Under the pieces are notes generated by a model. It searched no databases. It was not told the origin of the DNA and saw nothing but the letters and a program-made list of their open reading frames with translations. From Octopus sinensis (lineage: Eukaryota): a stretch of 28,549 nt of DNA. Every line of letters starts with the position of its first letter. Position 1 is the first letter of the stretch. Made by a program: the position numbers and the translations under genes. Below are positions 2,801 to 25,736 of this stretch, piece by piece. The stretch spans positions 1-28,549 of the forward strand of contig NW_021833561.1 of NCBI RefSeq assembly GCF_006345805.1, written 5' to 3'.

Positions 2801-3246
2801 GGCAATCTATTGAATCGATACGAAAAGAATTTACGGTAAAATTGTGTCGTTGGAATTTGAACTTTTTGCTCTATAAATACTACAACGTTGTAATTAAAGA
2901 CTAAGTGGACCTGTGGTTCCATTTCTTGGACAGTTCCACTGCTACATCCACATTCACATACGCACACACACAGAAACACAAAATACCCTCGAAGGCATTC
3001 AAATATAAAGGATTTTTGATTGATCGTTAATACTTTATTCATTAACACACAACATACCCTGTCTACAGATATTCTGTTTCCTCAAGTTTTCCATTCTCTA
3101 TTTACACCAGTAACCACAGTTCTTCTGAACAAGTTTGTTATATTCTTCTCAGCGGCTTACTTTACACACCCAATAGTGATTCTCTGAAGACTCGTATACA
3201 TTCAGCTTAAAAGAACATTTACTACATCACTAATCTTCTATATTTG

Positions 3247-3572
3247 GAAGCGCAATGGCCCAGTGGTTAGGGCAGCAGACTCGCGGTCGGAGGATCGCGG
3301 TTTCGATTCCCAGACCCGGCGTTGTGTGTGTTTATTGAGCGAAAACACCTAAAAGCTCCACGAGGCTCCAGCAGGGGTTGGTGGTGGCCACCCCTGTTGT
3401 ACTCTTTCGTCACAACTTTCTCTCACTCTCTCTTCCTGTTTCTTGAGTAACGCTGCGATGGACTGCCGACCCGTCCAGCTGTGGGGGGGGGGGACACGTA
3501 CGCCACAGAAACCGGGAAACCGGGCCCATGAGCATGGCTAGTCTTGAAAAGGGCGACGTTTATCGTTTTTAT
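3247..3572 (+). mobile_element. tRNA-derived SINE, family B2, full length with 13-bp TSD
   Basis: A box TGGCCCAGTGG, B box GGTTTCGATTCC; flanked by the direct repeat TCTTCTATATTTG at 3234-3246 and 3573-3585. Confidence 0.93.
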
Positions 3573-7664: not shown

Positions 7665-7963
7665 GAGGCACATGGCCTAGTGGTTAGAGCAGCGGACAGG
7701 CGGTCGAGGGATCGCGGGTTCAAATTTCAGACCGGGCGATGTGTGTGTTTATGAGCGAAAACACCTAAGCTCCACATGGCTCCGGCAGAAGGAAATGAAC
7801 TTCTGCTGACTCTTTCGCCACAACTTTCTCTCACTCTTTCCTCCTGCATCTTGCAGCTCAGCTGAGACAGATCGGCGTCCCGTCCAGGTGGGGAACCTAT
7901 ACGCCAAGGAAAGCGGGAAATCGGCCTTATGAGCCATGCATGGCTCGAGAAGGAACAACACAC
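7665..7963 (+). mobile_element. tRNA-derived SINE, family B1, full length with TSD
   Basis: gaggcacatggcctagtggttagagc...gggttcaaatt head; aac-rich tail; direct repeat AATATTTATA at 7651-7660 and 7964-7973 (14 bp with 2 mismatches). Confidence 0.93.
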
Positions 7964-13383: not shown

Positions 13384-13585
13384 TGTATATATATATTTGT
13401 GTGCGTGTGTATTTGTGTGCTTGTGTGTATGCGCGCGCGTGTGTGTCTGTGTATTTGTGTGTTTGTGTGTATGTGTGTATTTGTGTGTTTGTGTGTATGT
13501 GTGTATTTGTGTGTTTGTGTGTATGTGTGTATTTGTGTGTTTGTGTGTGTATTTGTGTATTTGTGTGTGTGTATATATATGTATG
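13384..13585. repeat. GT-rich array containing a 26-bp higher-order unit
   Basis: gtgtatttgtgtgtttgtgtgtatgt is perfect at 13449, 13475 and 13501 and near-perfect at 13527. Confidence 0.93.
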
Positions 13586-13587
13586 TA

Positions 13588-13742
13588 CATCATCGTAACT
13601 TAGAGGTTCGGCAAAAACCCCACAGTAGGATAAACACCAGACTTAAAAAACGTAAGTACTAGGGCCAATTTCATTCGATGTGAAAGCAGTTGAAGCGTTG
13701 CCCCAGCATGACCACAATCCAATGTGTCAAACAAATAAAAAA
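13588..13742 (+). mobile_element. 3' half of a diverged family A-related SINE
   Basis: cgtaacttagaggttcggcaaaa...taagtactaggg...ccccagcatgaccaca...aaacaaataaaa matches the family A 3' half. Confidence 0.75.
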
Positions 13743-14948
13743 AATGCACAAAAAACCCCCAGCAGATCGCCGTCAGAAGAAGACAAAGCGTTTAACTCAT
13801 TCGTCTCTTCCGATATTCTATCGACTTGCTCGTTTGCTGCTGCTTCTGTATTTCATATTAATATTTACCGCCGTCGAATATAAATAAAATAATATTACTA
13901 ATCGATTTAATAGAAGCAATTATTCATTTTCAGATTATTTCGTTGTTGATATAACTTCTCCTTTAAGGAACGAAAATCCTCCTGGGATTCACCGTTATCA
14001 CAGCGGTGTAAATATTATGATGGAATGTAATTTGTTTTATTTGGGGCAAGAGAGAAGTAATTGAAAATTAGCGATAAGGAGTGGTTCAGGTGAAAATTGC
14101 CTCCCTCCAGGTGATGCTGGTGGTTATGATTATTGTTGTTATTATTATGGTGGTGGTGGTGGTGCTGGTGGTGGTCAGTGAATATATATATATATATATG
14201 CAAGGAAGGTCGATTCGTTGATTGAAATAGATAAACAAACGTGTGTGCATGTTGTTAGAGTTTAGACGTTACGTCCAGAGAACGATGTGACCGTACATGT
14301 GGCGTGTGAAATAATGAGAATATCATTAAAATAATTCCCACACGTGTAATTTCGTTGGAGAATCAATGTATAGAATTAATATTAGTTGAAAGAGAGACAA
14401 GCATTTAGGACATTGAACTGTTTAAAATCATATTCTAGATGATTCGAAGTGTGCCGCTATTAGCCTTTATATGCTGTTTCACATTTAGTCGATTAGGCTT
14501 ATGAAATAGTTTCATACGGCAGCTTTGATCCGATGTAGTAATCATAACCACCTGTTTTTCAGTTTTTGATCGGGATTAGTAATTTATATTGACGCTTCAT
14601 TTTTGTCTAAGCTTGTCCTATACTAACATGGAATAAACTATTTCAGTTATGCCATGAAATTTTTGTTTCATGCTCTATTTTATGTTTTGTTCTGACCGTT
14701 GGTATCGTGTAGTATTTTCGACTTTGGCGTTCTTTTGGTACATGGTCGATCTATTTTTCGTAGATGCATTCTCAGGCTATTTTGTTACCTTATCTAAGCC
14801 TTGTCTCTTCTGTTCCGTAATGAATATAATTTATAATGAATTTGTAGCATTTCTCTATTTATAACGCACATACGTATACAGACATAATACAAACATTCAT
14901 ATACTTAAATATATACTATATATATTATATACACATGTGGATATATAC

Positions 14949-14985
<37 letters not shown>

Positions 14986-15038
14986 CTATATATATATAAT
15001 ATATATATAGTTCAAATTTACAGAAAACATAACGCTAT

Positions 15039-15350
15039 GACAGGTGTAGGAACAACAAGCATCTGTATTTGTTTAAAACTTGGCAAGAATGGAAAAATCT
15101 TTGACGTTTCGAGCCTACGCTCTTCGGCAGAAAGAATTCAGGGAAAAGAAAGAAAAATATTTGTGAGTGTGTGTGTATTAGAAAAAAATAAATAAAACAT
15201 AAAGACGAGGAGGGAAAATGGAGAGTTAAATGAACAAACGTGCCTCAAATAGAAGGTAACCGCCTGTTCCATGTGACAGGCTTGATAACTGCTGAGATTT
15301 ATTTCAGCATGAAACTAATGGTAGCCTGGTTAAACCACAGATAAAGAATA
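15039..15350 (-). mobile_element. Probable Penelope-like element terminal-repeat remnant
   Basis: Contains a minimal hammerhead motif of the kind associated with Penelope-like elements. No RT or GIY-YIG ORF is visible, so the class and boundaries are inferred. Confidence 0.4.
15094..15139 (-). ncRNA. Minimal type I hammerhead ribozyme motif (core position 6 is C instead of A)
   Basis: Minus strand GAAU-UCUUU CUGCCGA A GAGC-GUAG-GCUC GAA ACGU C AAAGA-UUUU. Stem I UCUUU/AAAGA, stem II GAGC/GCUC, palindromic stem III ACGU, GUC cleavage triplet. Confidence 0.7.
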
Positions 15351-15677
15351 CACACACACATATATACATAAATATATGAACACACATACCTATATACATT
15401 ATCTTCATCATCTTACGGCAGGGACATAAAATATGACAGGCATGGGGAGGAAAATAGATGTTGCACGGATGGTAATCGAACCAAGAAAGAAGGTCAGGTT
15501 TGGCTGAACACCGGTCACGTGGGGAGAAGTAGAGGCAGAGGGATAGAATAATTAGGGAGGAGTGAGAAAAAAGAGAGAGAGTGAAGTGAAAGAGGAGGGA
15601 AGGTGAGAATGAAGAGAAAGCCAAGAAATGTGAGAGAAGGGGAACGAAAGAAAGAAGAGTGGAAAGAATGATATCTA

Positions 15678-16340
15678 TAAATCTTTAAAATCTTTGAATC
15701 TTTAAATTGTTTCAGCTTCAAAGCTGCGGTCGTATTAGAGGCACCCCCGTTGGCTGTATAACACTGTTATTTCAATACACCTCTGATATGTGGCATTTGG
15801 CGAATGAGGGAGTTTGATGCAGCTACCCTCATCTGTGTTTTCTGCTCGTGGTAGGCTCATCTGAAACCCTTAACAGGAGGAGACCTAGTTTTGTTTTGAC
15901 GACACCTACACCATGCAATTCTCTCAGGCATCTTGGAAGGATATTGAAGAGCTGTGGGCCCTTGAAACCAAAGCTGTTGCAGTGTCTGTTCCTGTATTTC
16001 AAAGATGATGCTGGGAACCTGGCCACTATACAGTGGCGCCCCATTCTGCTGTTTGTGTAACTTACAATGCCAAAGTTTGTTACAAGGCCTTCCAGAATTT
16101 TCCAGATGTATATCACTGCATATCTTTCCCGCCTTCGTTCTAAGGAGAAGAGTTTTAACTCTTTTCCAGTAGCTGATACGTAGCATTGTGTAGCATCGAT
16201 GGATTGCTTCGAGTTCCGCCGTTAATTTTATATTGTGTGGTGACCAAAGATGGGAGCAGTAGTCCAAGTGGCTGAGGGAGTATGCCCTCCATCAGTGTCT
16301 CATTGTCTCTTGTTCTGAATGTTCGGAGGATCCATCCAGC
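15678..16340 (-). mobile_element. CR1-group LINE, 5'-truncated 3' end (RT C-terminus pseudogene, 3' UTR, tandem tail)
   Basis: Frameshifted GWILRTFRTRD..WRAYSLSHLDYCSHLWSP..ELEAIHR..SYWKR..IYIWKILEGLVTNFG..GFKGPQLFNILP..LR; ends gcagctttgaagctgaaac plus (aaagatt)-like repeats. Confidence 0.9.
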
Positions 16341-16480: not shown

Positions 16481-17060
16481 TTTTCTTTTTCTCTAGTTTC
16501 AGCTCGGAGCTGTGGCCATGCTGGTGCACCGCCGTTTTGCTACACTGTTATTATTTAGAACCTTCTCTAATATATGGCACTTGGTGAAGCATGGTGTTTG
16601 ATAGAGCTACCCTCATTTGAACCTCTTGCTGTGAGATAGATTCATCTGGAACCCTCGACAGGAAGAGGTCCAACTTTCATTTAAAAAAACCTCTGCATCT
16701 ACTATGAGTAAGTTCCTCAGACTCTTTGGGGCAATATTAAAAAGCTCTGGGCCCTTGAAACCCAGGCTTTTGCAGTAACTGTTCCTGAAGCGTGATGGCA
16801 TTGGCGGGATCTTTGGTACTATGCAGTGTCATCCCGTTCTGGCATTGGTGTAGCTTTCAATGCCGAAATTTGGCACAATTCCTTTCAGGATCTTCCATAT
16901 ATATATTACTGCATACCTGTCCCGTCTTCTATTCAGGGAGTAGAGTCTTAACTGTTTCAACCTTTCCCAGGTGTTGCAAAGAGACGATCTTCTTTGTGAA
17001 TCTTCTCTGGATTGCTTCAAGGTCCCCTGTTAATTTCACACTGGTGGGTGACCATAGCTG
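16481..17060 (-). mobile_element. Second CR1-group LINE 3' end, 5'-truncated
   Basis: QLWSP..LEAIQRRFTKKI..WERLKQLRLYSLNRRRDRYAVIYIWKILKGIVPNFG..GFKGPELFNIAPKSLRN..DLFLSRVPDE with frameshifts and a stop; ends ggcggtgcaccagcatggccacagctccgagctgaaac. Confidence 0.92.

Positions 17061-17072: not shown

Positions 17073-17109
<37 letters not shown>
17073..17109. repeat. (TG)n microsatellite
   Basis: Perfect TG run between the LINE 5' end and a SINE head. Confidence 0.97.
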
Positions 17110-17111
<2 letters not shown>

Positions 17112-17412
17112 AGGCGCAATGGCTCAGTGTTTAGGGCAGCGGAGTCGCGGTTTCGATTCCCAGACCGGCTGTTGTGAGTATTTATTGAGCGAAAAACACA
17201 TAAAGCTCCACGACCTCCTGTAGGGGATGGTGGCGTACCCTGCCGTACTATTTCACCACAACTTTCTCTCACTTTTTCTTCCTGTTTCTGTTGTACCTGT
17301 ATTTCAAAAAGACAGTCTTGTCACACTCTGTGTTACGCTGAATCTCCCTGAGAACTATATTAATGGTACACGTGTCTGTGGAGTGCTCAGCCACTTGCAC
17401 CGACGGAGTCCC
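17110..17412 (+). mobile_element. SINE family B3 with two internal deletions
   Basis: Matches 25352-25736 but lacks 14 nt in the tRNA head and 61 nt near the 3' end. Confidence 0.9.
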
Positions 17413-25351: not shown

Positions 25352-25736
25352 GTGGAGGCGCAATGGCCCAGTGATTAGGGCCGCGGACTCGCGGTCATAG
25401 GATCGCGGTTTAGATTCCCAGACCGGGCGTTGTGAGTGTTTATTGAGCGAAAACACCTAAAGCTCCACGAGTCTCCGGCAGGGGATGGTGGTGATCCCCG
25501 CTGTACTCTTTCACACAACTTTCTCTCTCTCACTCTTACTTCCTGTTTCTGTTGTACCTGTATTTCAAGGGCCGCCTTGTCACTCTCTATGTCACGCTGA
25601 ATATCCCCGAGAACTACGTTAAGGGTACACTGTGCTGTGGAGTGGATCCAGCATGTGCACGTTAATTTCACGAGCAGGCTGTTCTGTTGATTCGGATCAA
25701 CCGAACCCTCGTCGTCGTAACTGACGGAGTGCTTCC
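25352..25736 (+). mobile_element. SINE family B3, full length with 11-bp TSD
   Basis: B-type tRNA head and central block, distinct 3' half; direct repeat AAACGATGATA at 25341-25351 and 25737-25747. Confidence 0.93.

What the first reader, a model, noticed from the sequence alone, without database searches (positions are those of the whole stretch)
15094..15139. Minimal hammerhead ribozyme with palindromic stem III and a non-canonical core base
Seen (minus strand): stem I UCUUU/AAAGA (extendable by A-U, A-U, G.U after a U/U mismatch), core CUGCCGA, one extra A, stem II GAGC-GUAG-GCUC, GAA, self-complementary ACGU, and triplet GUC. Predicted cleavage is between positions 15103 and 15102. Known: Penelope-like elements carry minimal type I hammerheads whose short palindromic stem III lets them cleave as dimers; the canonical core is CUGANGA; an extra A after A9 is tolerated in a natural viroid hammerhead. 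Inference: a PLE-derived ribozyme, with A6-to-C either an inactivating mutation or a lineage variant. If it lies in a minus-strand host intron, it could cut pre-mRNA in trans-dimers with other genomic copies.
Basis: partly seen in the sequence, partly recalled or inferred. Interest (0 to 1): 0.85.

Follow-up and report, generated by a model that had tools for sequence, protein, structure and literature searches.

The report
Mutated relic of retrotransposon hammerhead ribozyme
The 46-base motif is real and matches a common class of tiny self-cutting RNAs carried by Penelope-like jumping genes in animals, but it is a lone copy with a damaging change in its catalytic core, so it is most likely an ordinary dead remnant.

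Summary
It is unlikely to be chance. A relaxed hammerhead descriptor gives about 0.006 hits per shuffled window, and a class-specific one gave 0 hits in 6000 simulated windows.

A metagenome scan for the same architecture, with position 6 left free to be A or C, returned at least 120 loci in animal DNA. Of 121 motifs, 120 have A6 and one has C6. The "extra" base after A9 is A in 106 of 121, so it is a class hallmark and not a defect. Helix I, which the pattern did not specify, covaries. In six of these loci the motif lies about 100-900 nt downstream of a GIY-YIG endonuclease reading frame on the same strand, which is the Penelope-like element (PLE) layout.

In this window there is:
- no PLE coding remnant
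- no second hammerhead copy
- no tandem unit
- no other copy of the flanks

Published data show that A6C cuts activity severely, even in full-size hammerheads.

Verdict: a solitary, mutationally inactivated PLE-type minimal hammerhead. It is ordinary and of low interest. I could not reach the source genome, so same-genome copies remain untested.

The parts
15094..15139 (-). Whole hammerhead-like motif (minimal type I layout, open at helix I)
   Evidence: Sequence read. Sole descriptor hit in the window. Scores 46.5 bits against a model built from 84 natural copies, next best 13.3 bits. That model is partly circular, because the copies were fished with a pattern taken from this motif.
15131..15135 (-). 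Helix I, 5' strand UCUUU
   Evidence: Pairs with AAAGA at 15102-15098. All five pairs are A-U or G-C, and four of the five are A-U, so the helix is weak.
15124..15130 (-). Catalytic box CUGCCGA; position 6 (15127) is C instead of the conserved A
   Evidence: A6 is present in 120 of 121 natural copies of the same architecture although the pattern allowed A or C. A6C gives low activity (PMC3088659; PMC9901934).
15123..15123 (-). Unpaired A between A9 and G10.1
   Evidence: A hallmark of PLE minimal hammerheads (PMC4209133). A in 106 of 121 natural copies at a position the pattern left free.
15111..15122 (-). Helix II hairpin GAGC-GUAG-GCUC, with the G10.1-C11.1 closing pair
   Evidence: This helix forms in every fold computed.
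15108..15110 (-). Conserved GAA (G12 A13 A14)
15104..15107 (-). Self-complementary ACGU (A15.1, C15.2, G16.2, U16.1). There is no loop 3, so helix III can form only between two copies.
   Evidence: A palindromic 15.2-16.2 is a class trait. My nearest-neighbour estimate for the 4-bp duplex alone is about -1.4 kcal/mol (own calculation, not a tool result).
15103..15103 (-). C17; predicted cleavage 3' of this base (between 15103 and 15102)
   Evidence: Position follows from the hammerhead numbering applied. Cleavage itself is untested.
15098..15102 (-). Helix I, 3' strand AAAGA

Best explanation
This is a solitary, decayed copy of the minimal type I hammerhead that Penelope-like retroelements (and their non-autonomous derivatives) carry in their flanking repeats.

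In an intact element the motif is transcribed as part of the element RNA. Two copies pair through the palindromic ACGU to build a shared helix III. Each then cleaves after C17, which trims the element transcript.

The copy here has lost its partner and its element. It also carries an A-to-C change at core position 6, in the CUGA U-turn of the catalytic pocket. It most likely does nothing today, or at most cleaves at a negligible rate.

Shown: the motif, its fit to the class, and the rarity of C6.
Inferred: its origin from a PLE insertion, and its inactivity.
For: 1. The motif is exact and improbable by chance: 0.006 per window for the general descriptor, and 0 in 6000 windows for the class descriptor.
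2. It has the class traits listed by Cervera and De la Pena 2014: an unpaired base between 9 and 10.1, G10.1-C11.1, palindromic 15.2-16.2 with no loop 3, and a helix I of 5 bp.
From the pattern's 21 fixed bases I estimate about one chance match.
4. Features the pattern left free are non-random in those hits: A6 in 120 of 121, the extra base is A in 106 of 121, and N7 is C in 68 of 121. Helix I covaries (GC 39, CG 13, AU 7; CG 41, GC 17, UA 8).
5. The class is PLE-linked. L080 carries a GIY-YIG reading frame. Endonuclease-like frames end roughly 100-900 nt upstream of the motif, on the same strand, in L061, L006, L095, L107, L073 and L080.
6. The loci hold animal genes: a B-box/NHL/filamin-repeat (TRIM-like) protein and a rhodopsin-type GPCR.
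7. A6C is damaging. A natural A6C hammerhead has kobs below 0.1 per min. All single and double mutants of the CUGA turn have low activity, apart from the C3-G8 swap.
8. Intact minimal hammerheads are already weak in vitro.
Against: - No PLE reading frame or endonuclease remnant anywhere in the window.
- No second or inverted partner copy.
- No other copy of the 14000-15780 region in the window.
- The flanks show no significant similarity to the flanks of the metagenome copies.
- I could not reach the source genome, so no same-genome family is shown.
- Helix II is 4 bp, shorter than the 6-8 bp reported for Schistosoma and Drosophila PLE motifs. However, 4-5 bp is the rule in the metagenome set.
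Confidence: 0.72

Rival explanations
1. Chance look-alike: an unrelated stretch of non-coding DNA that happens to fit a relaxed hammerhead descriptor.
For: - A core mismatch had to be allowed.
- The fold is no more stable than shuffles (z = +0.56).
- There are no supporting copies or PLE remnants in the window.
Against: - With the class traits added, I found 0 hits in 6000 simulated windows.
- The motif agrees with an abundant natural class at 21 of the 22 positions the pattern restricted, differing only at position 6. It also takes the commonest state at free positions: extra A, N7 = C, and a 4-nt loop.
Confidence: 0.1
2. Same ribozyme class but a different carrier: a monomer of a non-LTR retrozyme or SINE-like non-autonomous element, or part of the 3' tail of the adjacent LINE-like fragment, not a PLE flank itself.
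For: - Type I hammerheads also occur in tandem retrozymes and SINE-like elements. These are now argued to derive from PLE flanks (PMC7229834 listed).
- A LINE-like 3' fragment ends at about 15781, roughly 640 nt upstream in the minus sense.
Against: - No tandem unit near the motif; only microsatellites are present.
- No repeat of the region in the window.
- The two LINE-like copies stop being similar at 15781/16565, well before the motif.
Confidence: 0.12
3. A functional lineage variant: C6 is tolerated or selected in this species' elements, and the motif still cleaves slowly as a dimer.
For: - Rare natural core variants retain low activity, including an A6C hammerhead in a phage.
- All other boxes and helices here are intact.
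Against: - C6 occurs in 1 of 121 natural copies when A and C were equally allowed.
- That one copy has flanks resembling copies with A6.
- 20 further copies found by the model and inspected all keep A6 wherever the core is present.
- Minimal hammerheads lack the loop-loop contacts that could offset a core defect.
Confidence: 0.05

Closest known systems
Minimal type I hammerheads (min-HHR) in the flanking repeats of metazoan Penelope-like elements (Cervera and De la Pena 2014, PMC4209133)
   Same: - Open helix I of 5 bp
- Unpaired base between A9 and G10.1
- G10.1-C11.1 closing pair
- GAA box
- A15.1...U16.1 with palindromic 15.2-16.2 and no loop 3
- C17
- Occurs as a dispersed single copy, as most genomic copies do
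   Different: - C instead of A at core position 6.
- No PLE reading frame or second flank copy in the window.
- Helix II is 4 bp, against 6-8 bp in the published Schistosoma and Drosophila examples. It does match the 4-5 bp of the metagenome copies found here.
Metagenome family CUGACGA-A-GAGC-UAAC-GCUC-GAA-ACGU-C (loci L001-L120, animal DNA in host-associated metagenomes)
   Same: Identical in the core apart from position 6, in the extra A, N7 = C, the helix II sequence, the 4-nt loop length, helix III and C17. It scores within the range of true members against their model: 46.5 bits, against roughly 33-65 bits for the copies that matched the scan pattern.
   Different: - Loop II is GUAG, not UAAC.
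- Helix I is UCUUU/AAAGA, not GCU/AGC.
- The flanks are not detectably related.
- Many metagenome copies form head-to-head inverted pairs. This one is alone.
Natural A6C hammerhead of bacteriophage Bcep176 (Perreault et al. 2011, PMC3088659)
   Same: The same substitution at the same core position, measured at kobs below 0.1 per min.
   Different: It is a bacteriophage hammerhead in a phage intergenic region, not a minimal dimer-dependent motif in an animal repeat.
Non-LTR retrozymes (tandem repeats with type I hammerheads; PMC7229834; bioRxiv 10.64898/2026.07.22.740005)
   Same: Type I hammerhead with a short palindromic helix III that needs a second copy.
   Different: No tandem unit here. 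Retrozyme hammerheads are usually the canonical form, with 6-bp helix I and loop-loop contacts.

Membership tests
PLE-type minimal type I hammerhead | Catalytic box C3 U4 G5 A6 N7 G8 A9 | tested here: not met
   The sequence is CUGCCGA, with C at position 6 (15127). A6 is present in 120 of 121 natural copies.
PLE-type minimal type I hammerhead | G12 A13 A14, A15.1-U16.1 and H17 | tested here: met
   GAA at 15110-15108, A at 15107, U at 15104, C at 15103.
PLE-type minimal type I hammerhead | Helix II closed by G10.1-C11.1 | tested here: met
   GAGC/GCUC, 4 bp with loop GUAG.
PLE-type minimal type I hammerhead | Unpaired nucleotide between A9 and G10.1 | tested here: met
   A at 15123. Listed as a class trait, and A in 106 of 121 copies.
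PLE-type minimal type I hammerhead | Palindromic 15.2-16.2 with little or no loop 3, so helix III forms only in a dimer | tested here: met
   ACGU at 15107-15104.
PLE-type minimal type I hammerhead | Short helix I (4-5 bp) complementary across the motif | tested here: met
   UCUUU/AAAGA, 5 bp.
PLE-type minimal type I hammerhead | Lies in the flanking repeat of an element encoding RT plus GIY-YIG endonuclease, or belongs to a dispersed family traceable to one | tested here: inconclusive
   No RT or endonuclease remnant in the window. The literature says most genomic copies are solitary. Tracing a family needs the source genome, which I could not reach.
PLE-type minimal type I hammerhead | Many copies in the same genome with covarying helices | not testable with these tools
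   No eukaryotic genome collection is available. Covariation was shown only for copies from other animals.
PLE-type minimal type I hammerhead | Self-cleavage after position 17 | not testable with these tools
   Needs a bench assay. Published data on A6C predict low or no activity.
Non-LTR retrozyme | Tandem repeat units, each with a type I hammerhead | tested here: not met
   Only microsatellites near the motif. No second hammerhead. No repeat of the region.
Rfam hammerhead families | Score at or above the family's gathering threshold | tested here: not met
   No hit in the window. In a control, nine loci carrying canonical-core minimal hammerheads were also missed at E up to 1. This negative result therefore says nothing about the minimal class.

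The most novel reading that the evidence does not exclude
C6 is not decay but a lineage-specific core variant of this animal's Penelope-like elements. It would keep slow, dimer-dependent cleavage, perhaps helped by host factors, and would be a second natural A6C hammerhead and the first in a eukaryotic retroelement.
Probability: 0.04. Interest if true: 0.5.

Novelty: new member of a known kind. Interest (0 to 1): 0.12.

Why it matters
It matters little on its own. Thousands of such motifs, many of them mutated, are known per animal genome. [quoted passage not shown]

Two side results have modest use:
- With position 6 left free, natural copies of this architecture choose A over C by 120 to 1. 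This is a clean natural-variation readout of the constraint on A6 in the minimal, dimer-dependent class.
- The current Rfam hammerhead models miss this class entirely. Genome annotations that rely on Rfam will not flag these elements.

Tried and rejected
- Rfam, at gathering and at E up to 10: no hammerhead hit. I rejected this as evidence because the control shows Rfam misses canonical minimal hammerheads too.
- Exact look-ups of two window reading frames, to find the source contig: not on record.
- A protein-space trick: a search with the six pseudo-peptides spanning the motif, hoping to catch spurious reading frames on sister copies. It found no hits.
- A search with the neighbouring retrotransposon reading frame, to identify the organism: only six short ENA contigs, the best at 53% identity. 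The organism is not identified.
- A viral contig scan for the motif: 0 hits.
- Flank homology to the metagenome copies. BLAST alignments ran a few bases past the 5' end of the pattern. Profile searches built from the flanks alone did not recover the window site, so I rejected the apparent 5' flank resemblance.
- A search for PLE endonuclease remnants in the window with tblastn and a profile built from six loci: nothing better than E = 0.5.
- Pfam on the LINE-like frames: no domain. Their LINE assignment rests on motifs I recall, not on a test.
- Two-strand folding of the double hammerhead. The intended dimer is a kissing-type pseudoknot that ViennaRNA cannot score, so I made only a hand estimate for helix III.

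Full report
**Observation.** On the minus strand the window reads UCUUU-CUGCCGA-A-GAGC-GUAG-GCUC-GAA-ACGU-C-AAAGA from 15135 to 15098. A possible helix I extension reaches 15139/15094. The predicted cleavage site, 3' of C17, falls between 15103 and 15102. The only departure from the hammerhead core is C instead of A at position 6 (15127).

**Is it more than chance?** I wrote a descriptor allowing up to one core mismatch, an optional one-base insert after A9, helix I of at least 5 bp, helix II of at least 4 bp, and a helix III segment of 2-8 nt.
- It finds only this site in the window, on either strand.
- It gives 0.005-0.006 hits per window in 1500 block shuffles, 1500 Markov resamples and a further 6000 Markov windows.
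- I then also required the traits specific to the Penelope-type minimal class: insert present, G10.1-C11.1, and a palindromic helix III. That gave no hit in 6000 simulated windows.

The local fold is not unusually stable (-9.3 kcal/mol, z = +0.56). In a 260-nt context helix I drops out of the minimum-energy structure while helix II stays. That is expected for a motif whose helix I is almost all A-U.

**What the class looks like.** Cervera and De la Pena 2014 (PMC4209133) describe the minimal hammerheads of metazoan Penelope-like elements (PLEs). Their traits are a short helix I (4-5 bp), a conserved unpaired nucleotide between A9 and G10.1, a conserved G10.1-C11.1 pair, and palindromic 15.2-16.2 with little or no loop 3. 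Helix III therefore forms only between two copies. The motifs show very low cleavage in vitro and occur mostly as solitary copies, thousands per genome.

**Natural relatives.** I scanned the metagenome contigs for CUG[A/C]NGA-N-GAGC-N(3-8)-GCUC-GAA-ACGU-C, deliberately leaving position 6 free to be A or C.
From the 21 fixed bases I estimate about one chance match. This is my estimate, because the collection size is not given.
- Among 121 motifs, position 6 is A in 120 and C in 1. The unspecified extra base is A in 106. N7 is C in 68. The commonest loop is UAAC, in 63.
- In an alignment of 84 distinct copies, the three inner pairs of helix I covary. These pairs were not part of the pattern. Counts were GC 39, CG 13, AU 7 for one pair and CG 41, GC 17, UA 8, AU 4 for another. 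No shuffle reached the observed score, and slid registers scored much worse.
- The one C6 copy (L011) has 3' flanks resembling those of L029 and L106, which carry A6.
- I inspected 20 further copies that a covariance model found in these loci but the exact pattern had missed. All keep A6 wherever the core is present.

So C6 behaves as a sporadic mutation, not as a variant lineage.

**Link of the class to PLEs.**
- The loci are animal DNA. They encode a B-box/NHL/filamin-repeat (TRIM-like) protein and a rhodopsin-type GPCR.
- L080 has a reading frame with a GIY-YIG domain above Pfam's cut-off. By eye, it is preceded by an RT-like FIDD motif.
- Endonuclease-like frames related to it end roughly 100-900 nt upstream of the hammerhead, on the same strand, in L061, L006, L095, L107, L073 and L080. 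This is the position expected for the 3' flanking repeat of a PLE.
- Many copies also sit as head-to-head inverted pairs, as the 2014 paper noted for dual motifs.

**The window copy in context.** Scored against the model built from the 84 natural copies, the window motif reaches 46.5 bits. The copies that matched the scan pattern score roughly 33-65 bits. The next best site in the window scores 13.3 bits and lacks helix II. This score is partly circular, because the copies were fished with a pattern taken from the window. What it does show is that the window holds no second copy, inverted or tandem.

Other findings for the window:
- No other copy of 14000-15780.
- No tandem unit near the motif, only microsatellites.
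- No recognisable coding remnant in the six-frame translation of 13600-15800.
- No PLE endonuclease-like sequence anywhere by tblastn or by a profile built from six loci.
- The flanks are not significantly related to the flanks of the metagenome copies.
- The nearest mobile-element pieces are two diverged retrotransposon C-terminal fragments on the same strand, at 15781-16252 and 16565-17060 (68% identity). Their similarity stops about 640 nt before the motif.
- A SINE-like repeat lies at 17108-17385.

**Would it work?** A6 is the last base of the CUGA U-turn that shapes the catalytic pocket.
- A natural A6C hammerhead in phage Bcep176 cleaves at below 0.1 per min (PMC3088659).
- The same survey notes that most of its rejected hits were cryptic mutant hammerheads in repeated elements.
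- Minimal PLE hammerheads lack the loop-loop contacts that can buffer core defects. They cleave poorly even when intact, and only as dimers.
- Here the dimer interface is a 4-bp ACGU duplex, which I estimate by hand at about -1.4 kcal/mol, and no partner copy is nearby.

I therefore infer that this copy is inactive.

**Limits.** I could not reach the source genome.
- Exact look-ups of window reading frames failed.
- A pseudo-peptide search across the motif found nothing.
- A search with the neighbouring retrotransposon frame gave only six short, distant contigs.
- The organism is unidentified. The very high microsatellite load and the SINE suggest an invertebrate, but that is a guess.
- Whether the site lies in an intron of a minus-strand gene cannot be told.
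- The absence of Rfam hits carries no weight, because Rfam also misses canonical-core copies of this class.

**Verdict.** The structural reading, a PLE-type minimal hammerhead, is supported in every class trait but one. That exception, C6, is best read as an inactivating mutation in a solitary relic. The proposal of trans-dimer cleavage of a host pre-mRNA has no support. This is an ordinary by-product of retroelement decay.

Noticed in passing
window 15781-16252 and 16565-17060 (minus strand): Two diverged copies (68% identity) of a retrotransposon C-terminal reading frame in the same orientation, both broken by frameshifts. The motifs recall CR1/L2-type LINEs, but only from memory: Pfam finds no domain, and the protein database holds only six distant relatives.
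   Followed up: partly
window 17108-17385; also 25352-25644, 3245-3443, 2616-2752, 7712-7846: A SINE-like repeat with a tRNA-like head (contains GGTTTCGATTCCCAGACC), present at least five times in the window at 74-81% identity. ARAGORN calls no tRNA gene.
   Followed up: partly
window, throughout; e.g. 14909-15009 (AT)n, 17073-17110 (TG)n, 13500-13584 GT-rich: Very high microsatellite load. GC falls to 17-22% at 22-24 kb. There is a strong purine strand bias at 26-28 kb (GC skew 0.6, AT skew 0.58).
   Followed up: no
L016 205-289, L085 12719-12790, L065 3340-3413, L017 2803-2884, L042 596-697, L010 680-754, L040 1468-1557, L066 4206-4281: In the metagenome loci the same minimal hammerhead often occurs as a head-to-head inverted pair, abutting or overlapping at the 5' ends. 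One partner often carries GGGC instead of GAGC in helix II, which makes a G.U pair.
   Followed up: partly
L005, L064, L079, L003, L042, L046, L034, L080, L069: Rfam 15 hammerhead models detect none of the canonical-core minimal hammerheads in these loci at E up to 1. This is a blind spot for annotation pipelines.
   Followed up: yes
L053 2351-2382 and L117 2088-2116: Two of the pattern hits lie in contigs densely packed with long reading frames that look bacterial, not animal. They may be chance matches or unrelated bacterial hammerheads.
   Followed up: no
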